From NCBI GenBank assembly GCA_002269645.1, contig NIVC01000598.1, positions 470,286-534,285 on the forward strand: 64,000 bases of DNA, in the 5' to 3' direction. A program made the translations under genes and the position numbers. The notes beneath the pieces are model-generated. The model did no database searches. It was not told where the DNA came from and worked only from the letters and a program-made list of their open reading frames with translations. Below are positions 1 through 57,084 of this stretch, piece by piece (the first letter of the stretch is position 1; every line of letters starts with the position of its first letter). This DNA is from Macrostomum lignano. Lineage: Eukaryota.

Positions 1-29171
<29,171 letters not shown>

Positions 29172-29224
29172 TGATGGGAGCGGCCGGGTCAGTGGGGTGG
29201 CAACTGCCGACGGATGGGTGAGGT

Positions 29225-30220
29225 GTGGGGTCTGAGAGTGTGGGATTTGAGAGTGCGGTATTTGAGTGTGGGATTTGAGAGTGTGGGATTTGAGAGTGTG
29301 GGATTTGAGAGTGTGGTATCTGAGAGTGTCGGATTTGAGAGTGTCGGATTTGAGAGTGTCGGATTTGAGAGTGTCGGATTTGAGAGTGTCGGATTTGAGA
29401 GTGTGGGATTTGAGAGTGTCGGATTTGAGAGTGTGGTATCTGAGAGTGTCGGATTTGAGAGTGTCGGATTTGAGAGTGTCGGATTTGAGAGTGTCGGATT
29501 TGAGAGTGTCGGATTTGAGAGTGTCGGATTTGAGAGTGTCGGATTTGAGAGTGAGGGATTTGCGTGTGGGATTTGAGAGTGTGGGATTTGAGAGTGTGGG
29601 ATTTGAGAGTGTGGGATTTGAGAGTGTCGGATTTGAGAGTGTGGGATTTGAGAGTGAGGGATTTGAGAGTGTGGGATTTAAGAGTGAGGGATTTGAGAGT
29701 GTCGGATTTGAGTGTGGGATTTGAGAGTGTGGGATTTGAGAGTGAGGGATTTGAGAGTGTGGGATTTGAGAGTGTGGGATTTGAGAGTGTCGGATTTGAG
29801 AGTGTGGGATTTGAGTGTGGGATTTGAGAGTGAGGGATTTGAGAGTGTGGGATTTGAGAGTGTGGGATTTGAGAGTGTCGGATTTGAGAGTGTGGGATTT
29901 AAGAGTGAGGGATTTGAGTGTCGGATTTGAGAGTGTCGGATTTAAGAGTGTGGGATTTGAGAGTGTCGGATTTGAGAGTGTCGGATTTGAGAGTGTGGGA
30001 TTTGAGAGTGTCGGATTTGAGAGTGTGGGATTTAAGAGTGAGGGATTTGAGTGTCGGATTTGAGAGTGTCGGATTTGAGAGTGTCGGATTTGAGAGTGTC
30101 GGATTTGAGAGTGTCGGATTTGAGAGTGTGGGATTTGAGAGTGTCGGATTTGAGAGTGTCGGATTTGAGAGTGTGGGATTTGAGAGTGTGGGATTTGAGA
30201 GTGAGGGATTTGAGTGTGGG
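29225..30220. repeat. 15-bp array (GAGAGTGT[C/G]GGATTT)n
   Basis: Direct reading. Confidence 0.97.
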
Positions 30221-30705
30221 ATTTATAAACATGAAAATTAAATTCTCTTGAATATAAGTGGACGAAAATCTCAGTTCGCTTGCTGTGGTTTAAGAATGTT
30301 TTGTTAAATCTTGGCTTCCTGCAGCGGGCTCTGCGTGCACTTTTTAAAAGACAGTATTTCGCCACTCAAGCATTTTGCAGTTTCCGACCGTCCTCTCTCT
30401 TTCTCTCCTCATGTTAGGCGATGAATGCCACTCTGAATGGGAACTTTTGCCGCCAGTTCTCCCTATCGTTTGTCGTTCCGCTCTCCTATGCAGCTGATCT
30501 CTCCCTTCCCGCACTCCCGCTTCAGAGATCGATACACTTTTTTGCCTTGTGGGCGGGCCGCCGCGGTGCCTGCTGGCTGATATGGCAGTTTTTTTCTGTG
30601 CCAGTCAGCCAAGCACGTTTTTTTTCAAACTGTTGCATGGATTATGGCTGGCCAATTCGACACAGCAATCGTTTCTTGCTTTTATACCGAAGTTTATTCC
30701 AGGCG

Positions 30706-37657: not shown

Positions 37658-38489
37658 GTAAGCGAGTGAAGTTTATTTGGCGCGAATTGCCATCAATATA
37701 TAAAGGCGATATCGCCAGGGAGAGACGATCGATAAATTGATGTGCTCAAGCACTTAAAACAGTACGCATGGTCAGTACATAAAAACGAGTCCGAGACTAT
37801 GAGAAAAGCGGGGGGTGGCTAAAACTGTACAATTGGGCCAAGACGACCTTTGAGTGTAGAATAAAAATTGTAAAAATAAATGGCAAAATAAATAGACAAG
37901 GTAAATAAAAATTATTATTAAATGCTCAGAGCAAAAAATGCAGGTGCACCGTACACAGTGTCAGAAAAATGAATAAAAAGCAGAGAATAAATAATCTGAA
38001 TAAATCAAAATAAAGTCAATGAAAAAATCACAGAGGGGAAAAATAGCAGTAAAAGAGCCTCTGTACAGGCGTCAAAAGGGGCCTAGTTGGCAGGATCGAG
38101 CCGACTATGAGAGAGCAGAGTCCGGAGGCTTCTCCCCTTGGTGTAGGCGGGCAGCACCGGGGTCTCGCAGTGGCGTATCACCCTGTCCTTCACTTTGGCA
38201 GCCAGGGCGTCGGAGGTCGCACAGTGGGGCAGGATCAGCGGGATGGCCGGATTGTGCAGTATGCCGGCAAGTTCGTTGGCGCCGTGTGGAACATGAGTCC
38301 TCAGGACCTCGATAAACTTGGCCTCCTGGCGCTGACGCCGCTCGTCAGCTCTGGGTCCTGTGCCATCGCGTGTCCAGATGCCGGTGAAGACGAAGTCCGT
38401 CAGACTGTGGCCACCGCTGGTGAAGTGGCGCGCTACCGGAGTGTCACGGGTGTGCCGGATGTCACCGATGTGCGCCAGCATGCGACCAC

Positions 38490-39045
38490 GGATGAGAGAG
38501 GGTGAGAGAGGGTAAGAGAGGGTGAGAGAGGGTGAGAGAGGGTGAGAGAGGGTGAGAGAGGGTGAGAGAGGGTGAGAGAGGGTGAGAGAGGGTGAGAGAG
38601 GGTAAGAGAGGGTGAGAGAGGGTAAGAGAGGGTGAGAGAGGGTAAGAGAGGGTGAGAGAGGGTGAGAGAGGGTGAGAGAGGGTGAGAGAGGGTGAGAGAG
38701 GGTGAGAGAGGGTGAGAGAGGGTGAGAGAGGGTGAGAGAGGGTAAGAGAGGGTTAGAGAGGGTTAGAGAGGGTGAGAGAGGGGGAGAGAGGGTGAGAGAG
38801 GGTGAGAGAGGGTGAGAGAGGGTGAGAGAGGGTGAGAGAGGGTGAAAGAGGGTGAGAGAGGGTGAGAGAGGGTAAGAGAGGGTGAGAGAGGGTGAGAGAG
38901 GGTGAGAGAGGGTGAGAGAGGGTGAGAGAGGGTGAAAGAGGGTGAAAGAGGGTGAGAGAGGGTGAGAGAGGGTGAAAGAGGGTGAGAGAGGGTGAAAGAG
39001 GGTGAAAGAGGGTGAAAGAGGGTGAGAGAGGTTGAGAGAGGGTGA
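38490..39045. repeat. 10-bp array (GGTGAGAGAG)n inside the PLE relic
   Basis: Direct reading; same unit as 37330-37480. Confidence 0.97.
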
Positions 39046-39711
39046 GTGATGAGTGAGGGTAAGAAGCCCAGCTCCATCAGCACCTCTTATTTGATACGTG
39101 CGCAGGAAACGTCCGCTGTAGCCCTGGTGTCGCACCAGATTTTCTGGTGCAAGCTTCATCGAAGTCAGCCATCCGAGAGCGACGTCAAGGCGTATCTGAG
39201 AAGCTGGGACTTCACCACCCCTCGGAAAGTAGACTTGGGATGGAATGAGCTGCGATTGATGAGGGCTCGGACTGTCGGTGGGCTTGAAGAAAGTTATAAG
39301 TGGCACAGCAGAGAAAAATGTCCTTGGGGCGGCCGTAGCCCCCAGCACCCCCAGTTCACGGCATTCCCGAAGTCCATTCCCAGGTCAGGTGACTCCCAGT
39401 CTACGGCGCGGTGGAATGCAAAACTGGGCCGCACATTCGATGCCCTCGGTTGTCTCCCCCCCGCAAAATCAAGTTTTCCCAAACCGCATCGGTTTTCACC
39501 GGGATCTCCTGTAGCAGGGAACTGGCAGTCCATTGATCAGCCAGTGCCAGCGCTAGCCAAACTGCTGTGTGCCGGATGTACTAATACAGGGTGCGCTGAC
39601 TGACTGGTTGGCTGGATAAAAGATGCGATTTTTTGGGGAGATCCCGATGTAAAATTGACTTCTGCCAGCTGTTCTGAGGGGGAGAAATGTTGGTGAGGCT
39701 GGTTAAGCCGG

Positions 39712-41129: not shown

Positions 41130-42141
41130 CAAAACGTACATAAGTGTTCTCAGAATTGATCTGAGAGTGGGACAGCGGAGCCAAATCACTTGAATCGGGT
41201 GAACGAGTGGCTGCGTGTGTGCCGTGGCCGCGCATGCGCCTGCTTGAAATGTGATTGAAAGCCAGCCAAAGCCAAGTCTCTCTCTCTCTCCTCGGCTCCA
41301 ACTGTCGGCCGGTCATTAGAATCGATTTAGCAAGAGTAGAGGAGGGCATGGCGAGGTTTGAGTTCTCAAATCCTCAGTTGGGGGGGGGCGCGTCTCAAGG
41401 ATCTGGGGAATTCTCTCGCCAGGCCTTCCAAGTGCAGTGGGTTTGGAAACGAGGAAGGTAAAGGTGCAATCGCACTAGGAACTAAATATTCACCTCTGCA
41501 GTGATAATGATCACCAATAGTATTAAACAGCTGGCGATTGGAAAGCCAGGGCTCCTGTACACCATGCGTTGCGGTCAAAGGCAACGGCCTTCTTATTTAC
41601 CTCCTCGCTAGTCAAGGACTCGTCTTATTACAAGTAAAATTTAGATCACAAAAAAGATATAACAGCTTTTATTCTGTTAGTAGTACTGTTAGTAGGCTAG
41701 TAGCGATTCTATGATATTTTTATTTACCTATTCTTAAAAAATAATGAATCAGCATGTACTATTGCAAAGTTGCGCGCACTAATTCAAAAAGTACAAAGCA
41801 ATCAGTAATGCAAGTCAATTTAGTATTGACGTACCACAGGCAGAGACTCAAGCTTAAACATTTGGCTGACGGCAGCTGCAGCTCATTATTATGCATGAAA
41901 TGTTACAAGAACAGTCAGCATCCAGGCTTGCATTGCCTGCATACTTTGTTGCAGGCGTGCCACAGGAAAGCAAAGAAGGAGACCTGTTTAATTTAGAAGA
42001 ATTCTGGCTTGCTTGGCTTAAACTCAAACTCAAACTCAGTACAGCTGTTAAGCACCCGCAAACGATGCAATAAATTACCGCCTCAGGTGGACTTAAGCGG
42101 GGGAGCGCTCTCTTTTTCTCTATTTCAGTTTGTTTCTCGAA

Positions 42142-42155
42142 GTTTCCATGGAAAC
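42142..42155. promoter_or_regulatory. RFX X-box-like palindrome GTTTCCATGGAAAC upstream of copy A
   Basis: Perfect 14-bp palindrome (extends to 18 bp) fitting GTHNYYATRRNAAC, at -167 from the ATG. Confidence 0.65.
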
Positions 42156-42308
42156 TTGAGGCAGCCCCAAGACAATAGACTTTCCTACTAAAGCAGAGTT
42201 TGACTGCATCGGGTCTGCGCCACTTCCCCAGTTTGTTGAGATTCTCAAGCTCACAGCCTCTCACTCAGTGCTGCCTTCTCAGTCCTACTTACTGGACGGC
42301 CTTCCAAA

Positions 42309-43611
42309 ATGTCCTTATCGAGCATTGCCGTCATCGTGGCCATCTGGAGCTCTCGAGCTGCCGGTGAGACCTTCGTCTTCGACAAGAGGCCGGACCTGTG
42401 CTTCGCGGAGGCGGCCCCGGCTGCTGGCGACCAGCGCAAAGTGCTCGGAGTTGTTGACTCTCGAGTGTGCGCGGTTGAGTGCGCGGTCAACACCAGTTTG
42501 TGCTCCGTCTACCAATACCTGCCTGGCAACAAATCCTGCGTCCTTGGCAACAGCTGCGACCTGCTGCTGAAGTGGCAGAGCACCGGCGGGCCGGCGTGCG
42601 ACACGCAGACGCTTCGAGATCGGGCAGCGTGCGGGACCACAGCATCATCTACTGTCTCGACTACAGCTACAACCCAAACAACAACCACTGCACAAACCGC
42701 ATTTCATGGTAAATTGAGCATGAGATCTTCCGATCTAAATGCCGGGTCATGGGTGCCATTAGCGAACACTGTATCAGATTATAGCAATACAACACATGGA
42801 ACTTCTTCCAGCTCCTCCGTCGGACTCGAGCAACCAAACTGGATCGGTGCAGACTTTCACTCCGCCGACCGACGGCTGCTATCGAATCTCGGCTTGGGGC
42901 GCCAGAGGCGGCAAGTCATCCGCTAACGCGAACGGCGGCAGAGGCGCATTCAAGAGCGCCAATTTCATGCTGACCACGTCGCAAACTCTCACGCTTGTTG
43001 TTGGCAAGCCGGGAAACAGCGGCAGCAGCGGCGGAGGAGGCGGAGGAGGCGGAGGAGGCGGAGGAGGCGGCAGCTTTGTGTACACAACCGGCGACAACAC
43101 GCTGCTGCTGGCGGCCGGTGGCGGAGGAGGCGGCGGCGCCGAGTCGTCCTCGTCGGTCGGCAGAAACGGAACAAGCAGCACCGGAGGCTCTTGCGGCACA
43201 TCAGACGAACAAGGCGGTGACGGAGACAGCAACGATAACTCTGGCGCGGGCGGAGCTGGCTGGAGCTCAGACGGAGCAGCTCGAGCCACTGGCAATGGCG
43301 GAGGCCACGGTGGAAGAGGCATCGGCGGCAGCTGGGCCGGCGGCAACGCGGGAACGGGCAGCAACGGCTTCGGCGGCTACGGCGGAGGCGGCGGAGGCGG
43401 CAACAACGATGGTGACAAGGGAGGCGGCGGTGGAGGCGGCGGCTTCTCTGGCGGTTGCGGAGGATCCGGCGACAGCGATGACGGCTACGGAGGCAGCGGC
43501 GGCAGCTACGCGAGCTCATCCGGCAAGCAGGCCGCGGGAACGACAGGCGGCAACGGTGAAGTCTTCGGCAAGGTGAGCATCGCTCAGGTGGACGGCTCTC
43601 TGTGCCATTAA
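42309..43611 (+). CDS. copy A: secreted PAN/apple-like + Thr stalk + ALK/LTK-type glycine-rich protein, 399 aa; exons 42309-42708 and 42812-43611
   Basis: Signal-peptide-like N-terminus and an 8-Cys domain with CAVEC...CSVYQY...CVL. A 103-nt phase-1 intron (G|GTAAAT...TTCCAG) joins the two ORFs into TFTPPTDGCYRISAWGARGG...GGRGA...LTLVVGKPG...GGGGSFVY...LLLAAGGGGG. Confidence 0.85.
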
Positions 43612-44294
43612 CATGAGCACTCAGTCATTAGTTTGCTACTGTTTATAAATACAGGAAAATAAGGGGCTTGTGAATTGGATCAACTATTTGAAGGAGCGTC
43701 ATTTGAATTAACGTTGGGTTGGAAGATGTTGAGTGACAAACCAGCAACTTTGCAATCGTACAATTAAGACTTCTTACTTTCTGAATATATTTTTGATTAA
43801 ATATTTTTTCTTCACAAAGCCAATTCATTACGCGTATCGATTGACTTTCTCTTTTGTACTGCTCAGTTCTGAATTATGATTTATGCAGCCATGACCATAT
43901 TAGCCGTAATCCACTGACCCATGGTAACAAGCTTGAGTGCTTTGTCACAAAAATAAAAATTTTGTTCTGGTACAATTTGATTTTTTTCGAATGTCTTTAT
44001 ATAAAAGTTTCACTACTTACAGTAGGGTGACGTGTATTAGCAACTGCAAACTGGTTTTGTTGAACTTAAATAAATGGGCGAGTCATTCTGATGCAGTGGT
44101 TTCTCTTTAAATTCTCTAGCAAAAGGCAGCGTTCACCTATTCGAGTATATTTTATAAAGCAGTCTTTCTCTAATAAACTGAAATACGTTAATACGAGCAA
44201 TTTACTCTCTATAGCAACGTTATGGCTCTGTGACTTCTTCACGCTTAAGTCAGGCTTTGGAAGGATCTAAAAGCTGTGCGATCAGTGCTAGGCA

Positions 44295-45720
44295 CATTGG
44301 AAGGGTACAGTGGAAGGTTACAGTGGGTTCGCAGAGTTGAAGGGCACAGTGGAAGGGTACAGTGGAATGTCACAGTGGAAGGGCACAGTGGAAGGGCACA
44401 GTGGAAGGGCACAGTGGAAGGGCACAGTGGAAGGGTACAGTGGAAGGGTACAGTGGAAGGGCACAGTGGAAGGGCACAGTGGAAGGGCACAGTGGAAGGG
44501 CACAGTGGAAGGGCACAGTGGAAGGGTACAGTGGAAGGGTACAGTGGAAGGGCACAGTGTGGAAGGGTACAGTGGAAGGGCACAGTGGAAGGGTACAGTG
44601 GAAGGGTACAGTGGAAGGGCACAGTGTGGAAGGGTACAGTGGAAGGGCACAGTGGAAGGGTACAGTGGAAGGGTACAGTGGAAGGGTACAGTGGAAGGGT
44701 ACAGTGGAAGGGTACAGTAGAAGGGTACAGTAGAAGGGTACAGTGGAATGTCACAGTGGAAGGGCACAGTGGAAGGGCACAGTGGAAGGGCACAGTGGAA
44801 GGGCACAGTGGAAGGGTACAGTGGAAGGGCACAGTGTGGAAGGCTACAGTGGAAGGGCACAGTGGAAGGGCACAGTGGAAGGGCACAGTGGAAGGGCACA
44901 GTGGAAGGGCACAGTGTGGAAGGGTACAGTGGAAGGGCACAGTGGAAGGGTACAGTGGAAGGGTACAGTGGAAGGGCACAGTGTGGAAGGGTACAGTGGA
45001 AGGGCACAGTGTGGAAGGGTACAGTGGAAGGGCACAGTGGAAGGGTACAGTGGAAGGGTACAGTGGAAGGGTACAGTGGAAGGGTACAGTGGAAGGGTAC
45101 AGTAGAAGGGTACAGTAGAAGGGTACAGTGGGTTCGCAGAGTTGAAGGGTACAGTGGAAGGGTACAGTGGAAGGGTACAGTGGAAGGGTACAGTGGAAGG
45201 GTACAGTGGAAGGGTACAGTGGAAGGGTACAGTGGAAGGGTACAGTGGAAGGGTACAGTGGAAGGGTACAGTAGAAGGGTACAGTGGGTTCGCAGAGTTG
45301 AACGACACAGTGGAAGGGTACAGTGGAAGGGTACAGTGGAAGGGCACAGTGTGGAAGGGTACAGTGGAAGGGCACAGTGGAAGGGTACAGTGGAAGGGTA
45401 CAGTGGAAGGGTACAGTAGAAGGGTACAGTGGGTTCGCAGAGTTGAACGACACAGTGGAAGGGTACAGTTGAAGGGCACAGTGGGTTCGCAGAGTTGAAC
45501 GACACAGTGGAAGGGTACAGTGGAAGGGCACAGTGTGGAAGGGTACAGTGGAAGGGCACAGTGGAAGGGTACAGTGGAAGGGCACAGTGGAAGGGTATAG
45601 TGGAAGGGTACAGTAGAAGGGTACAGTGGGTTCGCAGAGTTGAACGACACAGTGGAAGGGTACAGTTGAAGGGCACAGTGGGTTCGCAGAGTTGAAGGGC
45701 AGAGTTGAAGGGCACATTGA
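44295..45720. repeat. 13-bp satellite (CAGTGGAAGGG[C/T]A)n between copies A and B
   Basis: Direct reading. Confidence 0.97.
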
Positions 45721-46879
45721 GTAATTCATCTCCACTTGAGAGCCGCGCGTGTCTCCGCTGCAAATATCCCGGCAATTTCATGAACCTGCTGTACGAATCA
45801 CTGAACGACTTGCTTCCAGGCTTACCTGACGCCTTCTTCTTCTTGGCCGAGCTGCTCCATTGCGGCTAGCAGAGATTGTAGCCGACTTGGCTCTCCCTCG
45901 TCCCGCAGACTTTGTTGGATCGCCTGCTGTCTTGGCTGGCTCCTTGCTCATTGCGTCCGGTTAGAGTCGCTGCAACGCCACTGTTATGGCTGAGACGGAT
46001 CACTGGCTTATTGGTTCATGGCTGATAAACGCCAAAATGTGTTATCAAGCTCAACTTTAATTTTTTCTACGAGTGCTAGCATTTCATATGCGCATCGCAT
46101 CTTTCAGCTACAAGCCGATGAAAATAAATGGTAGCAGTCCGTGCTGGCGATTCAAGTCTGTGATCGAGCCAGAGCAAACATTATGTGGGAAAAAGCGCCC
46201 ATCAGCTGGGATGTTCTACAAGTGTTTTAGTTAAGGTTTCTAAGCGAAACTCCCATGCCAGCAGTATCATAGTTTGAGGGATTGGGGGCCAGTGGCAGCT
46301 GATTGACTACAGAACTCGAATGATCTTTCCTTTAGAAAAAACCTTAAAGAATAATCACTGCATCAGACTGACTCGCCCGTTTATTCCAGTTCAACAAAAC
46401 CAGTTCAGAAATACGTGTCACCCTACTGTAAGTAGCAAAACTCGGATAGCTTTTTACATGAAAACGTTCAGAGAAAGGATCAAGTCTTTCAAGAAAAAAA
46501 GTTTAATTTTTCAGACAAAGCACTCAAGCTTGTTAACATGGGTCAGTGGATTACGGCAAATATGGTCATGCCTGCATAAATCATAATTCACAACTGAACA
46601 GCACAAAACCAGCAGAGAAAGTCAAACAAAGCTTGGCTCGCTTTGTGAATAAACGAATTTTATATTCAATATTTAATTAGAAAGATCACCCTAGGTTGCA
46701 AGCAAAATATAATATAAATATTTAATCATAAATATTCAATCATATCATTTTGGATTAAATCATAAATATAATCAAAAATTAATAAAAAATGACGTTCCTT
46801 CAAATAGTTGATCCAATTCACAAGCCCCTTATTTTCCTGTATTTATAAACAGTAGCAAACTAATGACTGAGTGCTCATG

Positions 46880-47835
46880 TTAATGGCACAGAGAGCCGTC
46901 CACCTGAGCGATGCTCACCTTGCCGAAGACTTCACCGTTGCCGCCTGTCGTTCCCGCGGCCTGCTTGCCGGATGAGCTCGCGTAGCTGCCGCCGCTGCCT
47001 CCGTAGCCGTCATCGCTGTCGCCGGATCCTCCACAACCGCCAGAGAAGCCGCCGCCTCCACCGCCGCCTCCCTTGTCACCATCGTTGTTGCCGCCTCCTC
47101 CGCCTCCGCCAAAGCCGCCGAAGCCGTTGCTGCCCGTTCCCGCGTTGCCGCCGGCCCAGCTGCCGCCGATGCCTCTTCCACCGTGGCCTCCGCCATTGCC
47201 AGTGGCTCGAGCTGCTCCGTCTGAGCTCCAGCCAGCTCCGCCCGCGCCAGAGTTATCGTTGCTGTCTCCGTCACCGCCTTGTCCGTCGGATGTGCCGCAA
47301 GAGCCTCCGGTGCTGCTTGTTCCGTCCTTACCGACCGACGAGGAAGACTCGGCGCCGCCGCCTCCTCCGCCACCGGCCGCCAGCAGCAGCGTGTTGGGGC
47401 CGGTTGTGTACACAAAGCTGCCGCCTCCTCCGCCTCCTCCGCCTCCTCCGCCTCCTCCGCCGCTGCTGCCGCTGTTTCCCGGCTTGCCAACAACAAGCGT
47501 GAGAGTTTGCGACGTGGTCAGCATGAAATTGGCGCTCTTGAATGCGCCTCTGCCGCCGTTCGCGTTAGCGGATGACTTGCCGCATCTGGCGCCCCAAGCC
47601 GAGATTCGATAGCAGCCGTCGGTCGGCGGAGTGAAAGTCTGCACCGATCCAGTTTGGTTGCTCGAGTCCGACGGAGGAGCTGGAGGGAGTTCCGTATGTT
47701 GTATTGCTATAGTCTGATACAGTGCTCGCTAATGGCACCCATGACCCGGCATTTAGATCGGAAGATCTCATGCTCAATTTACCATGAAATGCGGTTTGTG
47801 CAGTGGTTGCTGTTTGGGTTGTAGTTGTAGCTGTC
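46880..47835 (-). pseudogene. copy B: inverted, 5'-truncated paralogue (exon 2 46880-47679 intact, intron 47680-47782, only ~50 nt of exon 1)
   Basis: Reverse-strand match to copy A; homology stops near 47835, so it lacks the ATG, signal peptide, PAN-like domain and X-box; Gly-to-Cys change in WGARGG. Confidence 0.75.
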
Positions 47836-48077
47836 GACTGAATCCTTCGGGAACTTATGTCAATAAAACTCTCTTATTTGAAGTAAATTCTTATAGAATG
47901 AACCACGTTAATGCGCAGACTCTCTATAGCTTTCAGCGATCACAAAAGTTGTAGCTGTGTGACTTCATCATGCAATGGGTCGGTATGTGACAGTGTCAGG
48001 CTTTTGGGCTCCTCGCAACTGCCGGAATGCAGATTCCAGAAGTTCGCCATCTGCACATGGGAATGCACGGTTGAGAA

Positions 48078-48895
48078 GGATCTCGAGCATGCAGTCTCCC
48101 ATCTGTCAGATCTCGAGCATGCAGTCTCCTATCTGTCGGATCTCGAGCATGCAGTCTCCCATCTGTCGGATCTCGAGCATGCAGTCTCCTATCTGTCGGA
48201 TCTCGAGCATGTGAGCATGCAGTCTCCTATCTGTCGGATCTCGAGCATGCAGTCTCCCATCTGTCGGATCTCGAGCATGCAGTCTCCCATCTGTCAGATC
48301 TCGAGCATGTGAGCATGCAGTCTCCTATCTGTCGGATCTCGAGCATGCAGTCTCCCATCTGTCAGATCTCGAGCATGCAGTCTCCTATCTGTCGGATCTC
48401 GAGCATGTGAGCATGCAGTCTCCTATCTGTCGGATCTCGAGCATGTGAGCATGCAGTCTCCCATCTGTCGGATCTCGAGCATGTGAGCATGCAGTCTCCT
48501 ATCTGTCGGATCTCGAGCATGCAGTCTCCTATCTGTCGGATCTCGAGCATGTGAGCATGCAGTCTCCTATCTGTCGGATCTCGAGCATGTGAGCATGCAG
48601 TCTCCCATCTGTCGGATCTCGAGCATGCAGTCTCCCATCTGTCGGATCTCGAACATGTGAGCATGCAGTCTCCCATCTGTCGGATCTCGAACATGTGAGC
48701 ATGTAGTCTCCCATCTGTCGGATCTCGAACATGTGAGCATGCAGTCTCCCATCTGTCGGATCTCGAACATGTGAGCATGCAGTCTCCCATCTGTCGGATC
48801 TCGAACATGTGAGCATGCAGTCTCCCATCTGTCGGATCTCGAACATGTGAGCATGCAGTCTCCCATCTGTCGGATCTCGAGCATGCAGTCTTCCA
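48078..48895. repeat. 30/38-bp minisatellite (GCATGCAGTCTCCCATCTGTCGGATCTCGA[GCATGTGA])
   Basis: Direct reading. Confidence 0.96.
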
Positions 48896-50015
48896 TCTGT
48901 CGGTCTGAGAGCCCAAGCGCAACATATGCGGCACGAGACCGAAGAGGTAGCAACATCAAGGCCGCCTGTCTGCCACCGTCAGCACCGTATATGCACTATA
49001 GAGCATTTTCTGCGTTAGAGTCAAAGAAAGCGCTACCCTGTTAAATAGTTAAAGACATGTAAAGTCATGTTGAAGACATCTACATGTAAATGCAGCTCAG
49101 TTCAAAGCTACTTCGGCGCTGCCATCACAGGAGCCCAATATTTGCGTAATCACACGACTCGTTCACAAGCTGCTGTATCTTTGTACATCCTATGTGTGAT
49201 TTCATGGCAGCGTGAACGAGCTATTGAGTCACATCACTGACGTAACAAGCAACAACAAAAGTGAAGAATATTACAGAGGCGAGGGAGATATTTTTAAGTG
49301 GTGTCCAATCGAAATTCTCTGTGCCAGTATCATCAGTGCTATTGGCAGCTCATTGACTACCAAAATGGTCTCTGACAAGGTCAATTCACTAATAATTTTG
49401 TTTTTCTGGCTTTTAGAGGGCTTTTATATAACTTCCCGACGGATTCAGTCGATTCTTTGCCTGAAATCTCTCTTGCCTTAAATGCTTTGTCGCCCGTAGT
49501 GCCTTCAGTATGGTTCTGTCAGCAAGCCTAAAACTAGAAAGAAAATATGCACCACCCCCCAACACTGATGGCGCGCCAGGCATACCATGGGTCTCATTTA
49601 ACATCAGCTTAAAATGGAAGAGCTGAAATATCGACCGCTAATGGATAGCCTTCCCTCAAAAGAGAAGTTCTTTGGGTAACGACGCTAAGTGCCTTCACGA
49701 ATAGAGATTACTATAGAAAGTTTGCCAAGTCGTTTGTTGCAGAGCACCCATCCATTCTTAAGACTCGTCTCTCAGTAGACCGTGATAAGCCCCCCATTGG
49801 TAGAAATTTTTGTGGCACAGACTTTAACAAAAACTGAGTCTTTTTGCGTTTTCTAACATTTACAGCTTTTATCTCCCCATCAGGAGTTATCCCCTCCCAT
49901 TATCGCCTCCCATTTCAAGCTACGCTCGTACGCTACTGTGGCCTCTCGTTTCCCACTCTCGCTCCCCTCCTCTCTCACTCTCTCACATTTTCTCTCTGTC
50001 AGTTTGTTTCTCAAA

Positions 50016-50029
50016 GTTTCCATGGAAAC
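50016..50029. promoter_or_regulatory. RFX X-box-like palindrome GTTTCCATGGAAAC upstream of copy C
   Basis: Same motif, at -168 from the ATG. Confidence 0.65.
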
Positions 50030-50183
50030 ATTAGGCAGGCCCCAAGACAATAGACTTTCCTACTAAAGCAGAGTTTGACTGCATCGGGTCTGCGCTACTT
50101 CCCCAGTTTGTTGAGATTCTCAAGCTCACAGCCTCTCACTCAGTGCTGCCTTCTCATTCCTACTTACTGGACGGCCTTCCAAA

Positions 50184-51696
50184 ATGTCCTTATCGAGCAT
50201 TGCCGTCATCGTGGCCATCTGGAGCTCTCGAGCTGCCGGTGAGACCTTCGTCTTCGACAAGAGGCCGGACCTGTGCTTCGCGGAGGCGGCCCCGGCTGCT
50301 GGCGACCAGCGCAAAGTGCTCGGAGTTGTTGACTCTCGAGTGTGCGCGGTTGAGTGCGCGGTCAACACCAGTTTGTGCTCCGTCTACCAATACCTGCCTG
50401 GCAACAAATCCTGCGTCCTTGGCAACAGCTGCGACCTGCTGCTGAAGTGGCAGAGCACCGGCGGGCCGGCGTGCGACACGCAGACGCTTCGAGATCGGGC
50501 AGCGTGCGCGTCCACGAGCGACACTGCAGCCACAACTGCAGCCTCGACTGGAGCAGTTGCTACTACAACTACAACTACAACACCAACTACAACTACAACT
50601 ACAACATCAACTACAACTACAACACCAACTACAACTACAACACCAACTACAACTACAACACCAACTACAACTACAACACCAACTACAACTACAACATCAA
50701 CTACAACTACAACACCAACTACAACTACAACACCAACTACAACTACAACTACGACTACAACTACAACCCAAACAACAACCACTGCACAAACCGCATTTCA
50801 TGGTAAGTTGAGCATGAGATCTTCCGATCTAAATGCCGGGTCATGGGTGCCATTAGCGAGCACTGTATCAGACTATAGCAATACAACATACGGAACTCCC
50901 TCCAGCTCCTCCGTCGGACTCGAGCAACCAAACTGGATCGGTGCAGACTTTCACTCCGCCGACCGACGGCTGCTATCGAATCTCGGCTTGGGGCGCCAGA
51001 GGCGGCAAGTCATCCGCTAACGCGAACGGCGGCAGAGGCGCATTCAAGAGCGCCAATTTCATGCTGACCACGTCGCAAGCTCTCACGCTTGTTGTTGGCA
51101 AGCCGGGAAACAGCGGCAGCAGCGGCGGAGGAGGCGGAGGAGGCGGAGGAGGCGGCAGCTTTGTGTACACAACCGGCCCCAACACGCTGCTGCTGGCGGC
51201 CGGTGGCGGAGGAGGCGGCGGCGCCGAGTCTTCCTCGTCGGTCGGTAAGGACGGAACAAGCAGCACCGGAGGCTCTTGCGACACATCCGACGGACAAGGC
51301 GGTGACGGAGACAGCAACGATAACTCTGGCGCGGGCGGAGCTGGCTGGAGCTCAGACGGAGCAGCTCGAGCCACTGGCAATGGCGGAGGCCACGGTGGAA
51401 GAGGCATCGGCGGCAGCTGGGCCGGCGGCAACGCGGGAACCGGCAGCAACGGCTTCGGCGGCTTTGGCGGAGGCGGAGGAGGCGGCAACAACGATGGTGA
51501 CAATGGAGGCGGCGGCGGAGGAGGCGGCTTCTCTGGCGGTTGTGGAGGATCCGGCGACAGCGATGACGGCTACGGAGGCAGCGGCGGCAGCTACGCGAGC
51601 TCATCCGGCAAGCAGGCCGCGGGAACGACAGGCGGCAACGGTGAAGTCTTCGGCAAGGTGAGCATCGCTCAGGTGGACGGCTCTCTGTGCAGTTAA
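50184..51696 (+). CDS. copy C: secreted PAN-like + 98-aa Thr/Pro stalk + Gly-rich protein, 469 aa; exons 50184-50802 and 50906-51696
   Basis: Same structure; 103-nt phase-1 intron G|GTAAGT...CTCCAG; open frame. Confidence 0.85.
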
Positions 51697-51884
51697 CATG
51701 AGCGCGCACTGATACTCGTCATTTTTTATTGTTACAAACACTGGAAAACAATCAGCTTGCATACTTGCGCGACGGCTCTGCGCAAGAGGTGCACGGTGAT
51801 GGGCGGCACTTCTCGAAAAAGTTCCCCTGCCCTATCCCGCGACCAAAGCGTGGTTAGTTACATCAGCCTAATTAAATATCTTAC

Positions 51885-52107
51885 TACACTACACCTGTCC
51901 ACGGCTGTTCAGTGCAAGGACTGGGGGGTCGCCACACACAGCCTCAATTACCCCAGCTAATGCTGGCACCCATTTTACAGCTGGGTGAACTGAAGCAATG
52001 CAGAGTTAAGTGTCTTGCTCAAAGACACGAATTGTTCCGAGTGGGTCAGGAATCGAACCCCCGACCTTTTAGTTGTGAGTCCAACGCTCCAACCTATAAC
52101 CTAAGGC
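51885..52107 (-). mobile_element. tRNA-derived SINE with a conserved-type central domain
   Basis: Minus strand has a tRNA-like head with B box GGTTCGATTCC, followed by GTGTCTTTGAGCAAGACACTT...TTCACCCAGCTGTAAAATGGGTGCC, a body pattern typical of ancient metazoan SINEs. Left boundary is approximate. Confidence 0.7.
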
Positions 52108-52224
52108 TACAACCCAACCTACCTGTCCTTTATTACGTACAGCACATTAGCGCTTATCCATTGAGAATTCCAAAGTAGTCATGGTCCAAAAATTGAGTAT
52201 TGCGTATTAAATAAAATTCTGACA

Positions 52225-54542
52225 ACAACAAACAACAAAATACGCTGTCAGGATGGCAAAAGTCAGCATCACAGGGCGCGCTTCATGGCTTGGGCGCGAA
52301 CAAAGGCCGCACCACAGGCAGTGTCCGGGGCGCCGGCGTCAGCCAGCAGACAGTCGACATAACGCCGAGTTCGCGCTTGTCCTCGCCGGTAGGGTGCCTG
52401 CAGCGTGAGCAGCAGCACCTCCTGCACCGGCTGTGGGCAGTACGACTCGGCGCGGATGAGATGGCCTGCGAGCTGGAGTCGCCGACGGCGCAGTAGATCG
52501 CTTGGACGTGGCAGGCCAGCGCGGCGATAGAGTGCCGCGTTGGTGACTCGCTCGACGCCGATGTTGAAGGCGACGCGCAGCAGGCCAGCGTGCGCCGCAT
52601 CGACTTGCTGTTCGAGTGAGTCCGTCAGCGTCCAGGTCTCGGCGTTGTACAGCAGGACGGTCTCGATTACCGCCTGGAACAGCGCCGCCCTCTGGCGGTC
52701 CGGTAGGGCCTCGGACTGCAGGACTGCCCTCACAGAACGAAAGGCAGCCCAGGCAAGCCCGCGGCGGCGTCGCAGGTCCTCGCGAGCGTCTGGAACCAGA
52801 CCGCCGAGGTAGACGAACTGCTGACATCGCGGGAGTTCGGTCGCCTGCCCGTCAGTGCCTCGGCAGAATATTACAGTCTCGATGTCGTCCGGCACGCAGA
52901 GCACAACGGTCTTCTGCGTGTTGACCACCAGGCCGACGCTCGCCGCAACGGCAACTAGCGTGTCCAGCTGCCGTTGGGCGCCCTCGACGGTCGAGGACCG
53001 CAAGGCGAGGTCGTCGGCGTAGCCAAGCACGCTGAGCCGTTTCTCCGGTTGACGTCGACCCACGCGTCGCCGCAGCAGAAAACCGTCGTCGTCGGTAGGA
53101 AGAGCAATCCGCAGCACCCAGTCAAGCACCAGGACGAACAGGAACGGCGCCAGCGTATCTCCCTGAAGCACTCCGGAGGATGTCTCAAAGGAGTCCGATA
53201 GGCCATCCGGTGTTGTCACAGCAGCTGTCGTATCACGGTACATCGCCATGATGGCGGAGATCAGCTGCTTAGGCACGTTGTACGCGTGGAGCACCATTGG
53301 AAGCACGGCTCTGACAACCGAGTCGAATGCCTTCTTGAAATCGATAAAGATTAGAATCAGGATCGACTGGCGAATCCGCGCCTCCTCGATGACTCGGCGA
53401 AGAGCCAGGATCTGCGCCACTGTGCCGCGATGGGGCCGGAACCCGTTCTGCTCTGGGCGCAGGTACGGATCCAGCACGGGCTGCAACCGCGAAAGCAGCA
53501 TCCGGTTGAACAGCTTCGCTGCACAGGACTGAAGGCAGATGCCTCGATGGTCTTCAAGCCTAGTGGTGCCCGGCTTCTTTGGAACAGCGACGATGTGCGC
53601 CGATGTGTGCCGTGGTCCATTCGTTGGGCGCCGCCTCACCGAAGAGCACGCGGTTCATCACTCTAGCGACCTCAGCGGCCACACAGGGGATGCGCAGCGC
53701 CTCGATGGGCACCTCGTCCGGACCCAGCGCTTTCCCGCCCGGTGACTGCTGGGCGAGCTTGACAACGTCGGCTGCGTTGACTGGGGCTACGCTGAAACTC
53801 TTCTCTGCCGGCAACGGCGTCTCCGGCGGCAGCGTCAGACTGTCTGGCAGCGGGGGTGGCGGCGCGTTAACGATGGCGGCGAAGAACTCGCGCAGCTCGT
53901 TCCTGCGCTCGTCCGGAGTGTCACCAGCCAGGTTCAGCGGATTGCGCCGCTTTCGCCCCGTCAGAGCGTTGATGGCGGACCAGGCCACGCGCTCTCTGGC
54001 ATCGGGCCCAGCGGCAGAGACAGCCAGAATGGCGTCATCGACAGCCGCTTGTTGGCGCTGCAGGTAGACAGCCGCCAGAGCTGCCTCTGCCTCGCGGGTT
54101 GGTCGCCTGCTCAAGCGGAGCCTCTCCAGATCTTTCCTCGCTGCCTGAATCGCAGGGTCGTCCTGCCAGACCGGCTGCCCACGTTGAGCCGGTTGCATCA
54201 TCGGGACTACTTGCTCCGCGGTGGTTCTGACTGCAGCGCACACTTCCGCATACTCGGCACTTCCACGCTTGTCGCCCAGCGCGGTGTTAAAGGCGCTAGC
54301 AAAGCGACGCTGCGTATCGGTGGCTCTGAGCGCGCGGTAGTAGCACCGCGGTGGCCGCTTCGGCGGACGGTAGAGCGGATCGCAAAGGTTGAGGTCGCAG
54401 ATGAGGAGCCGGTGATCGGACCGCAGAGCCAGCGGCGTGATGGTGCGGCAGTTGACGGCGCGACGACGCTCACGGAAACGCACGAGCACGTGGTCGAGCT
54501 GTGCTTGTCTCCGGGTTGCGTACCTGCCACGCGCAGGAACGC
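52225..54542 (-). mobile_element. 5'-truncated RTE-clade non-LTR retrotransposon (APE C-terminus and RT), one frameshift
   Basis: SDH motif of APE; RT motifs EQNGFRPHRG, IDFKKAFDSV, GVLQGDTLAPFLF, YADDL, YLGG; short 3' UTR with TTG-rich tail; 10-bp TSD AATTCTGACA at 52215-52224 and 54543-54552. Confidence 0.93.
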
Positions 54543-55033
54543 AATTCTGACAGCTTGCTTTATATAGCTTCATCTTACCACTTCTAGTAGGCTAGTTGTA
54601 AAAATCCTCCAAGAAATGTACAAAGGCGACAAAAAAAGTAGAATCCGTGAATAGTAACCACGTGCGATGGCCGCATAAACGAGCTCTTAACATGGAGCTG
54701 GAAGTATTAAAATCACTTCTCCATAGTTGATAAGGAGCACTGATTAAAAAATTCGCTATTTAACGCAATAATTCTTTGAAATACGTGCGATGGTCAAAAT
54801 GTGCGCTTGTACCCCAAACTCGGTACTTTAGCGGCATCGATCAACTTATCCTCATGAGTAGAGATTTCTAAAGAGAACCATTTTTCCACGTCGTTTTTGC
54901 GGAGGACCCAACCCATTCCCACGACTGGTCTTTATTTTCTCCCCTCTCGCTCTACGTCCCCACCTTTCCCCGCTCTCCCTCCCCTCCTTTCTCGCTCTCT
55001 CACATGTTTCCCTCTGTCAGTTTGTTTCTCAAA

Positions 55034-55047
55034 GTTTCAATGGAAAC
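55034..55047. promoter_or_regulatory. X-box-like variant GTTTCAATGGAAAC upstream of copy D
   Basis: One mismatch to the A/C palindrome, same -168 position. Confidence 0.5.
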
Positions 55048-55201
55048 ATTAGCCAGGCCCCAAGACAATAGACTTTCCTACTAAAGCAGAGTTTGACTGC
55101 ATCGGGTCTGCGCTACTTCCCCAGTTTGTTGAGATTCTCAAGCTCACAGCCTCTCACTCAGTGCTGCCTTCTCATTCCTACTTACTGGACGGCCTTCCAA
55201 A

Positions 55202-56654
55202 ATGTCTTTATCGAGCATTGCCGTCATCGTGGCCATCTGGAGCTCTCGAGCTGCCGGTGAGACCTTCGTCTTCGACAAGAGGCCGGACCTGTGCTTCGCG
55301 GAGGCGGACCCGGCTGCTGGCCACCAGCGCAAAGTGCTCGGAGTTGTTGACTCTCGAGTGTGCGCGGTTGAGTGCGCGGTCAACACCAGCATGTGCTCCG
55401 TCTACCAATACCTGCCTGGCAACAAATCCTGCGTCCTTGGCAACAGCTGCGACCTGCTGCTGAAGTGGCAGAGCACTGGCGGGCCAGCGTGCGACACGCA
55501 GACGCTTCGAGATCGGGCAGCGTGCGGGACCACGAGCGACACTGCAGCCACAACTGCAGCCTCGACTGGAGCAGTTGCTACTACAACTACAACACCAACT
55601 ACAACTACAACTACAACTACTACTACAACTACAACACCAACTACAACTACAACTACAACTACAACACCAACTACAACTACAATACCAACTACAACTACAA
55701 CACCAACTACAACTACAACCCAAACAACAACCACTGCACAAACCGCATTTCATGGTAAGTTGAGCATGAGATCTTCCGATCTAAATGCCGGGTCATGGGT
55801 GCCATTAGCGAACACTGTATCAGATTATAGCAATACAACACATGGAACTTCTTCCAGCTCCTCCGTCGGACTCGAGCAACCAAACTGGATCGGTGCAGAC
55901 TTTCACTCCGCCGACCGACGGCTGCTATCAAATCTCGGCTTGGGGCGCCAGAGGCGGCAAGTCATCCGCTAACGCGAACGGCGGCAGAGGCGCATTCAAG
56001 AGCGCCAATTTCATGCTGACCACGTCGCAAACTCTCACGCTTGTTGTTGGCAAGCCGGGAAACAGCGGCAGCAGCGGTGGAGGAGGCGGAGGAGGAGGCA
56101 GCTTTGTGTACACAACCGGCCCCAACACGCTGCTGCTGGCGGCCGGTGGCGGAGGAGGCGGCGGCGCCGAGTCTTCCTCGTCGATCGGTAAGGACGGAAC
56201 AAGCAGCACCGGAGGCTCTTGCGGCACATCCGACGGACAAGGCGGTGACGGAGACAGCAACGATAACTCTGGCGCGGGCGGAGCTGGCTGGAGCTCAGAT
56301 GGAACAGCTCAAGCCACTGGCAATGGCGGAGGCCACGGTGGAAGAGGCATCGGCGGCAGCTGGGCCGGCGGCAACGCGGGAACGGGCAGCAACGGCTTCG
56401 GCGGCTACGGCGGAGGTGGCGGAGGCGGCAACAACGATGGAGTCCCTCCTGACGGCCGCGGTGGAGGCGGCGGTGGAGGAGGCGGCTTCTCTGGCGGTTG
56501 CGGAGGATCCGGCGACAGCGATGACGGCTACGGAGGCGGCGGTGGCAGCTACGCGAGCTCATCCGGCAAGCAGGCCACGGGAGCGACAGGCGGCAACGGT
56601 GAAGTCTTCGGCAAGGTGAACATCGCTCAGGTGGTCGCCTCTCTGTGCAGTTAA
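55202..56654 (+). CDS. copy D: secreted PAN-like + 76-aa Thr stalk + Gly-rich protein, 449 aa; exons 55202-55754 and 55858-56654
   Basis: Same structure and intron; open frame; unique VPPDGR insert. Confidence 0.85.
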
Positions 56655-57084
56655 CATGAGCAGTCAGTCTTTTCTCATCGACATTATGCAGGCCAGATTA
56701 TACTTACTGTACTTACTTTTTAAAGCTATTTAAACTTATTTAAACATGCTTACTTTCTCTATCGCAGCTACAGTAGTGCAGTTTCTATTGAAGATTCCTT
56801 TAGATTGCATATTAATGCATACATGTACTGTAGCTATGAAGTAGTATGCTCAGTAAAAATTTTTCTGTTCCTAATTGAACAAATATTGCCTCGTACAAGG
56901 AACTCCCGAATTTTTAAAGTTTTTTATCTCTGTCGTATTTATTTGTAATTAATTTTCTTCGCTTTTAAGCCTTAAATCTATACAACATATACAATAAGTT
57001 TAGATTGAAATAATAAAACAACTCTATTTGACACAGCTCCTTAAGTTACGTCATTTCTGGCTATTTAGTTATTGTGAACTTTGT

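What the first reader, a model, noticed from the sequence alone, without database searches (positions are those of the whole stretch)
42142..55047. RFX X-box at the same position upstream of all three intact copies, hinting at a ciliated-cell programme
Seen: GTTTCCATGGAAAC at 42142 and 50016 and GTTTCAATGGAAAC at 55034, each starting 167-168 bp before the ATG, near the left edge of the ~200-bp block shared by the copies. Known: RFX/DAF-19 X-boxes (GTHNYYATRRNAAC) sit in proximal promoters of ciliary genes. Inference: the secreted Gly-rich proteins are made by multiciliated epidermis or ciliated sensory cells, and copy D may be weaker or differently regulated. The three sites share one ancestor, so they are not independent evidence.
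Basis: partly seen in the sequence, partly recalled or inferred. Interest (0 to 1): 0.7.

Follow-up and report, generated by a model that had tools for sequence, protein, structure and literature searches.

The report
Candidate RFX X-box upstream of secreted-protein genes
Three tandem genes for a secreted glycine-rich protein share a 14-base palindrome identical to a proven nematode binding site for the cilia-gene regulator RFX, so it is a good candidate regulatory site, but it counts as one inherited occurrence and its function is untested.

Summary
GTTTCCATGGAAAC lies at 42142 and 50016, and GTTTCAATGGAAAC at 55034, 167-168 bp before the ATG of three intact paralogues. Each site is about 34 bp inside the left edge of a ~200-bp shared upstream block.

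The A/C motif is as good as X-boxes get. It is letter-for-letter the validated C. elegans xbx-6 X-box (-151 from ATG). It scores 19.6 bits on a matrix built from 29 other validated sites, above 23 of them. The copy-D variant breaks the consensus and scores 14 bits, a level chance produces about once per 64 kb.

The copies are 93-98% identical gene-conversion mosaics, so this is one ancestral event. The motif changes no more slowly than synonymous sites. No orthologue could be retrieved, so cross-species conservation, the informative test, could not be run.

The transcription start is unknown. A splice-acceptor-like tract ends 13 nt upstream of the motif, and the motif contains a CCATGG upstream ATG. 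The sequence also fits TTCN4GAA (STAT-type), which copy D keeps.

The genes encode signal peptide + PAN + Thr-rich linker + ALK/LTK-type glycine-rich domain, which is not a ciliary protein.

Verdict: a plausible functional RFX site (~45%); ciliated-cell expression is untested.

The parts
42142..42155 (.). Copy A X-box candidate GTTTCCATGGAAAC. It is a perfect 14-bp palindrome, and 18 bp (AAGTTTCCATGGAAACTT) in this copy only. It lies 167 bp before the ATG.
   Evidence: 19.6 bits; identical to the validated xbx-6 X-box.
50016..50029 (.). Copy C X-box candidate GTTTCCATGGAAAC, 168 bp before the ATG.
55034..55047 (+). Copy D degenerate X-box GTTTCAATGGAAAC. A C>A change at position 6 breaks the consensus and the palindrome but keeps TTCN4GAA.
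   Evidence: D-specific change aligned to 42147; 14.0/14.2 bits.
42108..42308 (+). Shared upstream block of copy A (equivalents: 49982-50183 in C, 55007-55201 in D). No TATA box. Inr-like YYANWYY sites at 42220, 42228 and 42279 are conserved in all copies. There is no ATG between the motif and the start codon.
42110..42128 (+). Pyrimidine tract + CAG (3' splice-site-like) ending 13 nt upstream of the motif. Copy A fits the [T/C]TNCAG trans-splice acceptor motif reported for Macrostomum lignano; copies C and D do not (TGTCAG).
   Evidence: motif from PMC8629364. Its function is not shown.
42309..43611 (+). Gene A: exon 1 42309-42708, intron 42709-42811, exon 2 42812-43611; 399 aa. Signal peptide, PAN/apple-like domain, short Thr-rich linker, ALK/LTK-type glycine-rich domain.
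   Evidence: LTK 7NX0, E 2e-10; coral PAN + GRD homologues.
50184..51696 (+). Gene C: exon 1 50184-50802, intron 50803-50905, exon 2 50906-51696; 469 aa. The Thr-rich linker is lengthened by an 18-bp tandem repeat (50562-50779).
55202..56654 (+). Gene D: exon 1 55202-55754, intron 55755-55857, exon 2 55858-56654; 449 aa. It is the most divergent copy but intact (dN/dS about 0.5).
46791..47830 (-). Copy B': a 5'-truncated inverted copy holding the end of exon 1, the intron and exon 2. It has no signal-peptide/PAN part and no upstream block. It lies tail-to-tail with copy A across a 13-bp minisatellite, and the 3'-flank homology runs on to about 46344.
52269..54573 (-). Non-LTR retrotransposon fragment (reverse transcriptase ORF plus an overlapping upstream ORF in another frame) between copies C and D. 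Its 5' side ends about 400 bp upstream of D's shared block.
   Evidence: RVT_1, E 1e-28.

Best explanation
The palindrome is a genuine RFX-type X-box that was present in the proximal promoter of the ancestral PAN + glycine-rich-domain gene. It has been carried into, and kept similar between, the paralogues by duplication and gene conversion. An RFX dimer would bind the two half-sites (GTTTCC / GGAAAC) some 65-135 bp upstream of a TATA-less start region and help drive transcription in RFX-expressing cells. In an invertebrate these are most often ciliated cells. Copy D has lost one half-site and should respond more weakly. Shown: the sequence, its position, its identity to a validated DAF-19 site, its high matrix score and the weaker score of copy D. 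Inferred: RFX binding in this animal, the position upstream of the transcription start, any effect on expression, and the cell type.
For: (1) The 14-mer is identical to the validated C. elegans xbx-6 X-box at -151. (2) It scores 19.6 bits on a matrix built from 29 other validated sites, above 23 of them. No hit at that level appeared in 20 shuffles of the window, and the next unrelated hit in the real window scores only 12.0. (3) The strict consensus is expected 0.23 times per 64 kb. About 1 in 1000 random 14-bp palindromes would fit it (my calculation), and the window holds only four other such palindromes. (4) The distance to the ATG (167-168) lies within the validated range of 60-285. (5) It sits inside the only 5' sequence that all three intact copies share. 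Homology runs ~200 bp upstream of the ATG but only ~8-15 bp past the stop codon, as expected if this block carries the common promoter. (6) No ATG lies between the motif and the start codon (weak, P about 0.13), and Inr-like sites lie downstream of the motif; both fit a start site downstream of it. (7) Palindromic X-boxes are over-represented among true Drosophila targets (PMC2375033). In a flatworm, an Rfx orthologue is linked to cilia gene modules whose promoters are enriched in the RFX motif (PMC12660999).
Against: There is only one independent occurrence. The motif is no more conserved than neutral sites: 1 difference in 14 bp against a dS of 0.046-0.072, and the 42 nt around it (42129-42170) differ by 5-12% between copies, while 42171-42308 differs by 0-1.4%. 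Copy D has already lost the consensus yet keeps an intact reading frame. No orthologous promoter could be examined. The one related locus fetched, a coral PAN + GRD gene, has no X-box upstream. The product is a secreted protein with no ciliary signature. The motif has T/A at positions 4/11, so it fails the stricter fly/mammal consensuses GYTRYY..RRHRAC and RTNRCC..RGYAAC quoted (by inspection). No forkhead (RYMAAYA) partner site is present in the block. The transcription start and the species' RFX genes are unknown.
Confidence: 0.45

Rival explanations
1. It is a chance palindrome with no regulatory role. A fortuitous 14-mer in the ancestral upstream region has simply been copied and homogenised along with the gene by duplication and gene conversion.
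For: The three sites are one event. The copies are mosaics: in the upstream block C=D against A; in exon 1 A=C with 0 differences in 325 nt; in the intron A=D against B'=C. Identity therefore reflects conversion, not selection. The motif and its flanks change at or above the synonymous rate. D has lost the consensus without visible damage to the gene. 14-bp palindromes occur at about the chance rate in this window: 6 seen, about 4 expected. Laurencon et al. found single-species X-box presence non-predictive.
Against: A chance match of this quality is rare: none at 19.6 bits or more in 20 shuffles, 0.15 per 64 kb at 16.2 bits or more, and 0.23 per 64 kb for the consensus. Landing in the ~200 bp before a start codon makes it rarer still.
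Confidence: 0.25
2. It is a binding site for a different factor. TTCCATGGAA is a TTCN4GAA palindrome of the STAT type (from general knowledge, STAT6 and Drosophila STAT92E accept 4-nt spacing). Each half also carries a GGAA(A) core of the ETS/NFAT/Rel kind.
For: TTCN4GAA is present in all three copies, including D, because the D substitution falls in the spacer. So the only change seen destroys the RFX reading but spares the STAT-type reading. A secreted, tandemly amplified, fast-evolving family (dN/dS about 0.5) would fit an inducible or immune-type programme.
Against: TTCN4GAA specifies only 6 bases and is common by chance. It does not explain the outer GT..AC positions that make the 14-mer a perfect X-box. 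One substitution has no statistical weight. No STAT data exist for this organism.
Confidence: 0.12
3. The motif lies inside the mature transcript. The pyrimidine tract + CAG ending at 42128 is a cis- or trans-splice acceptor, which puts the palindrome 13 nt into the 5' UTR. There its CCATGG would start a short upstream ORF (MET* in A; 14 codons in C and D) and act on translation, not transcription.
For: A strong 3' splice-site-like tract lies at the very point where homology between the copies begins. Copy A fits [T/C]TNCAG. If the source is a flatworm such as Macrostomum, about 30% of genes are SL trans-spliced. The upstream ATG has an optimal CCATGG context.
Against: Copies C and D do not fit the acceptor motif. 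CT-rich tracts are everywhere in this genome (41% tandem repeats). The upstream ORF differs in length and frame between the copies. There is no significant RNA structure (z = -0.55, +0.85, +1.39). A strong upstream ATG would be costly for an abundant secreted protein. Cis-splicing would need three unrelated upstream exons. This reading does not exclude RFX binding, because human X-boxes cluster from -500 to +500 around the start site (PMC5838959).
Confidence: 0.12

Closest known systems
C. elegans DAF-19/RFX X-box promoters, especially xbx-6 (F40F9.1)
   Same: The 14-mer GTTTCCATGGAAAC is identical. The distance to the ATG is similar (-151 against -167/-168). It fits GTHNYYATRRNAAC. It is a single proximal site in a compact upstream region.
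   Different: The organism is different and unidentified. There is no evidence of RFX binding or dependence. The target is a secreted PAN + glycine-rich-domain family, not a ciliary or ciliated-neuron gene. One paralogue carries an off-consensus version.
Drosophila and mammalian RFX X-boxes (GYTRYY N1-3 RRHRAC; RTNRCC N1-3 RGYAAC; JASPAR RFX2 type GTTGCCATGGCAAC)
   Same: Palindromic full site with a 2-nt AT spacer. Fits the looser GYTDYY N1-3 RRNRAC. Lies close to the gene start. Palindromic boxes are enriched among true targets.
   Different: It has T/A instead of R/Y at positions 4/11, so it fails the two stricter consensuses (by inspection). In those systems cross-species conservation was needed for prediction, and that could not be tested here.
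STAT GAS-type palindrome TTCN4GAA
   Same: TTCCATGGAA / TTCAATGGAA matches in all three copies.
   Different: That motif has much lower information content. The outer GT..AC positions and the AT centre are unexplained by it. The assignment rests on general knowledge of STAT sites, not on a test.
ALK/LTK glycine-rich ligand-binding domain proteins (Pfam PF12810), including coral PAN + GRD secreted proteins
   Same: Residues ~139-371 align to human LTK and ALK ectodomains (7NX0 E 2e-10; 7MZW E 3e-5). Homologues carry PF12810, and some corals have the same PAN + GRD order (P0021, P0028).
   Different: There is no kinase and no transmembrane segment. The Pfam hits are below the curated cut-offs (PAN 19.6 against 21.4 bits; GRD 17.2 against 24.5). 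A variable Thr-rich mucin-like linker is present. Identity to the coral proteins is only about 35%, and the coral locus has no X-box.

Membership tests
RFX/DAF-19 X-box promoter element | 13-15 bp inverted repeat that fits the X-box consensus (C. elegans GTHNYY AT RRNAAC) | tested here: met
   Copies A and C match exactly, are identical to validated xbx-6 and score 19.6 bits. Copy D does not match (14 bits).
RFX/DAF-19 X-box promoter element | Fits the stricter fly/mammal consensus (GYTRYY N1-3 RRHRAC or RTNRCC N1-3 RGYAAC) | tested here: not met
   By inspection against the consensuses quoted: position 4 is T (not R) and position 11 is A (not Y). It fits only the looser GYTDYY N1-3 RRNRAC.
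RFX/DAF-19 X-box promoter element | Proximal position (C. elegans: mostly 60-285 bp before the ATG; human: -500 to +500 of the TSS) | tested here: met
   It lies 167-168 bp before the ATG, within the validated range. Its position relative to the TSS is unknown (one search gives the human window).
RFX/DAF-19 X-box promoter element | Conserved in sequence and position in orthologous promoters of related species | not testable with these tools
   No orthologue was retrievable. The N-terminal query gave 0 hits among 5.8 billion proteins. The metagenome scan gave none. Exact look-ups gave none. The paralogues are not independent.
RFX/DAF-19 X-box promoter element | More constrained than neighbouring neutral sequence | tested here: inconclusive
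   There is 1 variable site in 14 against a dS of 0.046-0.072. Its flanks (42129-42170) are the most variable part of the block. Gene conversion removes the power of this test.
RFX/DAF-19 X-box promoter element | Bound by an RFX protein, with expression dependent on RFX or on the box | not testable with these tools
   This needs EMSA, ChIP or DAP-seq, RNAi, and reporters.
RFX/DAF-19 X-box promoter element | Target expressed in ciliated cells or encoding a ciliary component | tested here: inconclusive
   The domain content (signal peptide, PAN, Thr-rich linker, ALK/LTK GRD) shows no ciliary component.
ALK/LTK glycine-rich domain (PF12810) proteins | Significant similarity to the ALK/LTK glycine-rich ligand-binding region | tested here: met
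   phmmer against PDB: LTK 7NX0 E 2e-10, ALK 7MZW E 3e-5. 140 homologues, most of them carrying PF12810. The direct Pfam hit is below the cut-off (17.2 against 24.5 bits).
PAN/apple domain (PF00024) | Pfam match above the gathering score | tested here: inconclusive
   E 8e-4, 19.6 bits against a cut-off of 21.4. Coral homologues with the same architecture carry PF00024.

The most novel reading that the evidence does not exclude
In this animal (possibly a free-living flatworm) the ciliogenic factor RFX has been recruited to drive a lineage-specific, tandemly amplified family of secreted, mucin-linked proteins built on the ALK/LTK ligand-binding fold. Multiciliated epidermal or ciliated sensory cells would then make a surface or secreted coat under the same switch that builds their cilia, and paralogue D would be escaping that control.
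Probability: 0.25. Interest if true: 0.5.

Novelty: new member of a known kind. Interest (0 to 1): 0.3.

Why it matters
If the box works, it gives a one-step handle on where and when an otherwise uncharacterised secreted family is made. That family combines PAN, a mucin-like linker and an ALK/LTK-type glycine-rich domain. It would also add a secretory cargo to the RFX regulon in a little-studied animal lineage. The A/C and D boxes would form a natural allelic series for testing half-site requirements. If it does not work, the case shows that paralogous promoter copies under gene conversion give no independent support for a motif. Either way the regulatory principle (RFX binding X-boxes near gene starts) is well known, so the gain is incremental.

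Tried and rejected
1. Orthologue search for cross-species conservation. The full protein found only distant GRD relatives, 40% identity or less. The N-terminal PAN part found nothing. A metagenome DNA scan found nothing.

2. Organism identification. Rfam and tRNA scans were empty. PIG-S gave only ~35% identity to sea urchin and crustacean proteins. The M. lignano spliced-leader sequence is absent from the window. The only trace of the source species is the UniParc chimera P0003.

3. X-box upstream of a related gene. The Porites PAN + GRD locus L001 has none upstream; the best hit, 13.9 bits, lies downstream of the gene.

4. Constraint test on the paralogues. It was uninformative because of gene conversion.

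5. RNA hairpin role for the palindrome. Rejected: z-scores -0.55 to +1.39.

6. Forkhead/FOXJ1 partner site, TATA box and TTCN3GAA in the block. None found.

7. ATG depletion between the motif and the start codon as a marker of the 5' UTR. Not significant (P about 0.13).

8. The palindrome as part of a dispersed repeat or transposon end. There are no other copies in the window and no extended inverted repeat beyond 18 bp in copy A (by inspection).


Full report
OBSERVATION. GTTTCCATGGAAAC occurs at 42142-42155 and 50016-50029, and GTTTCAATGGAAAC at 55034-55047, with no other match in the window and none in 100 shuffles. Only the first two fit the C. elegans consensus GTHNYYATRRNAAC, for which 0.23 matches per 64 kb are expected. 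Copy D has A where a pyrimidine is required. The start codons are at 42309, 50184 and 55202, so the boxes start 167, 168 and 168 bp upstream. Self-BLAST and alignment show that the sequence shared by all three copies starts at about 42108 / 49982 / 55007, 34 bp to the left of the box. C and D share a further ~67 bp of CT-rich sequence.

WHAT THE GENES ARE. Each intact copy has two exons and a 103-nt GT..AG intron (A: 42309-42708 + 42812-43611; C: 50184-50802 + 50906-51696; D: 55202-55754 + 55858-56654).
- The products are 399, 469 and 449 aa long.
- Each has an N-terminal hydrophobic signal-like segment and a PAN/apple-like domain (PF00024, E 8e-4, just under the cut-off).
- A Thr-rich linker follows; its length varies through an 18-bp tandem repeat.
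- The C-terminal domain is homologous to the glycine-rich ligand-binding region of human LTK and ALK (7NX0 E 2e-10; 7MZW E 3e-5).
- Distant homologues are common, and some corals have the same PAN + GRD order.
- A fourth copy (46791-47830, minus strand) is 5'-truncated. It has no upstream block and lies tail-to-tail with copy A across a 13-bp minisatellite.
- A non-LTR retrotransposon fragment (52269-54573, minus strand; RVT_1 E 1e-28) lies between C and D.
Nothing in the protein points to a ciliary component.

ONE EVENT, NOT THREE. The copies are 93-98% identical and are clear mosaics.
- In the upstream block, C = D against A.
- In exon 1, A = C (0 differences in 325 nt) against D.
- In the intron, A = D against B' = C.
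- Exon 2 is mixed.
This is the signature of gene conversion. Homology runs ~200 bp upstream of the ATG but stops 8-15 bp after the stop codon, and the flanks beyond are unalignable (78-83% variable columns). That asymmetry fits a shared promoter or 5' UTR kept together with the coding sequence. It says nothing specific about the box.

Within the block, the 42 nt around the box (42129-42170) are the most variable part (5-12% pairwise), whereas 42171-42308 differs by 0-1.4%. The box has 1 variable site in 14. At synonymous divergences of 0.046-0.072, 0.6-1 differences are expected, so there is no sign of constraint and no power to detect it. The evidence is a single ancestral occurrence.

HOW GOOD IS THE MOTIF. 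It is very good.
- Table 1 of Chu et al. (PMC3245922) lists 31 validated C. elegans X-boxes. One of them, xbx-6 at -151 from the ATG, is GTTTCCATGGAAAC, letter for letter.
- I built a log-odds matrix from the 29 other 14-bp validated sites. On it the A/C box scores 19.6 bits, above 23 of the 29 in leave-one-out scoring.
- No hit at that level appeared in 20 shuffles of the window, 0.15 per 64 kb are expected at 16.2 bits or more, and the best unrelated hit in the real window scores 12.0.
- Copy D scores 14.0-14.2 bits, below all but 3 validated sites and at a level chance gives about once per window.
- The distance of 167-168 bp is on the long side: the median for validated sites is 94, and 5 of 30 lie beyond it.
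- Against this, the box has T/A at positions 4/11. It therefore fails the stricter fly/mammal consensuses GYTRYY N1-3 RRHRAC and RTNRCC N1-3 RGYAAC, and fits only GYTDYY N1-3 RRNRAC (consensuses from PMC2375033; comparison by inspection).

PROMOTER OR TRANSCRIPT. This cannot be settled from sequence.

For a promoter position:
- The block has no TATA box.
- Conserved Inr-like sites lie at 42220, 42228 and 42279.
- No ATG occurs between the box and the start codon, though that depletion is not significant (P about 0.13).

For a transcript position:
- A pyrimidine tract + CAG ends at 42128, 13 nt upstream of the box, exactly where the homology between copies begins.
- In copy A this fits the [T/C]TNCAG trans-splice acceptor motif described for Macrostomum lignano (PMC8629364). 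In C and D it does not.
- If the box were transcribed, its CCATGG would start an upstream ORF of 3 codons in A and 14 codons in C and D, in different frames relative to the main ATG.

The palindrome gives no significant RNA structure. A position inside the transcript would not by itself refute RFX control, because validated human X-boxes cluster from -500 to +500 around the start site (PMC5838959).

OTHER READINGS OF THE SAME LETTERS. TTCCATGGAA is a TTCN4GAA palindrome of the STAT type, and each half carries a GGAA(A) core. The D substitution falls in the spacer, so all three copies keep TTCN4GAA while D loses the X-box. This is one substitution and a low-information motif, so I weight it lightly. 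No forkhead (RYMAAYA) site accompanies the box.

ORGANISM AND EXTERNAL EVIDENCE. The window is 41% tandem repeats. A PIG-S gene at 59814-61868 (minus strand) is only ~35% identical to echinoderm and crustacean proteins. The source is therefore a metazoan with no close relative in the searchable databases. A UniParc entry, P0003, is a chimeric gene model stitched from near-identical counterparts of several minus-strand pieces of this window. So the species was annotated around 2016. A repeat-rich flatworm such as Macrostomum lignano would fit (15% simple and tandem repeats, ~30% of genes trans-spliced). This is a lead, not a result, and its spliced leader is not in the window.

No orthologue of the gene family could be retrieved. 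Cross-species conservation is the test that made X-box prediction work in Drosophila: 16 of 25 genes with conserved boxes were confirmed, whereas presence in one species was 'not predictive'. That test could not be run. The one related locus fetched, a Porites PAN + GRD gene, has no X-box upstream. In planarians an Rfx orthologue is linked to cilia modules whose promoters are enriched in the RFX motif (PMC12660999), so the RFX-cilia link probably holds in flatworms. Human RFX factors also act in immune, gut, reproductive and nervous tissues (PMC5838959), so an X-box does not by itself mean cilia.

WEIGHING. A chance match of this quality in the ~200 bp before a start codon is rare. I estimate roughly 1e-4 to 1e-3 per promoter. 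True RFX targets make up perhaps 0.5-1% of animal genes (general knowledge). That arithmetic favours a real site. Four things pull the other way:
- the lack of any independent replicate;
- the non-ciliary, lineage-specific nature of the gene;
- the loss of the box in an otherwise intact paralogue;
I put a functional RFX site at about 0.45, a chance passenger at 0.25, another factor's site at 0.12 and a transcript-internal element at 0.12. The last is not exclusive of RFX binding. Expression specifically in ciliated cells I put at about 0.3-0.35.

VERDICT. The step to a ciliated-cell programme is untested. It is a candidate new target of a well-known regulatory system, of modest interest.

Noticed in passing
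window 28809-30365, 38083-39348, 42309-43364 and 46880-47644 (all minus-strand readings): UniParc entry UPI0007A34941 (P0003, 520 aa, unnamed) is a chimeric gene-model product. Its pieces are near-identical, but not identical, to a sense exon-2 fragment of a GRD copy, antisense frames of GRD exon 2 and exon 1 (including 18 nt of antisense 5' UTR), and two other minus-strand ORFs of this window with a tandem repeat skipped. It is the only trace of the source species in the searchable databases, and it suggests either a homeologous/allelic locus or a minus-strand read-through annotation.
   Followed up: partly
window 1-64000: About 41% of the window is covered by tandem repeats with periods of 4-60 bp, many of them over 1 kb long (for example the 13-bp unit at 19757-21047 with 100% matches, and (TCTA)n at 14227-16952). 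They create many long spurious ORFs in all frames.
   Followed up: partly
window 42634-42660, 50515-50802, 55533-55754: The Thr-rich linker between the PAN and glycine-rich domains varies by about 70 residues between paralogues, through expansion of an 18-bp (ACTACAACACCAACTACA) / 6-bp repeat. Copy A has essentially none. This is a mucin-like, probably O-glycosylated spacer under length variation.
   Followed up: partly
window 42108-43640 compared with 46791-47830, 49982-51703 and 55007-56672: The paralogues are gene-conversion mosaics whose sister relationships switch segment by segment. Homology ends 8-15 bp after the stop codon but extends ~200 bp before the ATG. The 3' UTRs of A/B', C and D are unrelated, so copy-specific probes are possible.
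   Followed up: yes
window 43612-44110 and 46344-46790, flanking 44294-45681: Copy A and the truncated copy B' form an inverted, tail-to-tail pair that shares ~500 bp of 3' flank (77% identity) on either side of a 1.4-kb 13-bp minisatellite (ACAGTGGAAGGGT)n.
   Followed up: partly
window 52269-54573 (minus strand): A non-LTR retrotransposon fragment. It has a reverse-transcriptase ORF (RVT_1, E 1e-28) that overlaps, in a different frame, an upstream 337-aa ORF with no Pfam match. The upstream ORF ends in an SDH-containing stretch that I recall as typical of the C-terminus of AP-type endonuclease domains, so the element is probably 5'-truncated and frameshifted. It lies about 400 bp upstream of copy D's promoter block.
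   Followed up: partly
window 59814-61868 (minus strand): Exons of a GPI-transamidase PIG-S gene (PF10510, E 1e-22), with minisatellites in its introns. Identity to the best database proteins (sea urchin, copepod, crabs) is only ~35%, which indicates a divergent metazoan lineage.
   Followed up: partly
window 42538, 50413, 55431 (plus strand): A weak X-box-like 14-mer, GCGTCCTTGGCAAC (9.7 bits), lies inside exon 1 of each copy. It is well below validated sites and is most likely chance.
   Followed up: no
window 2947-3612, 8647-9111, 18751-19674 (minus strand): Long polyglutamine- and polyproline-rich ORFs without Pfam matches. They may be exons of one or more low-complexity nuclear proteins on the minus strand.
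   Followed up: no
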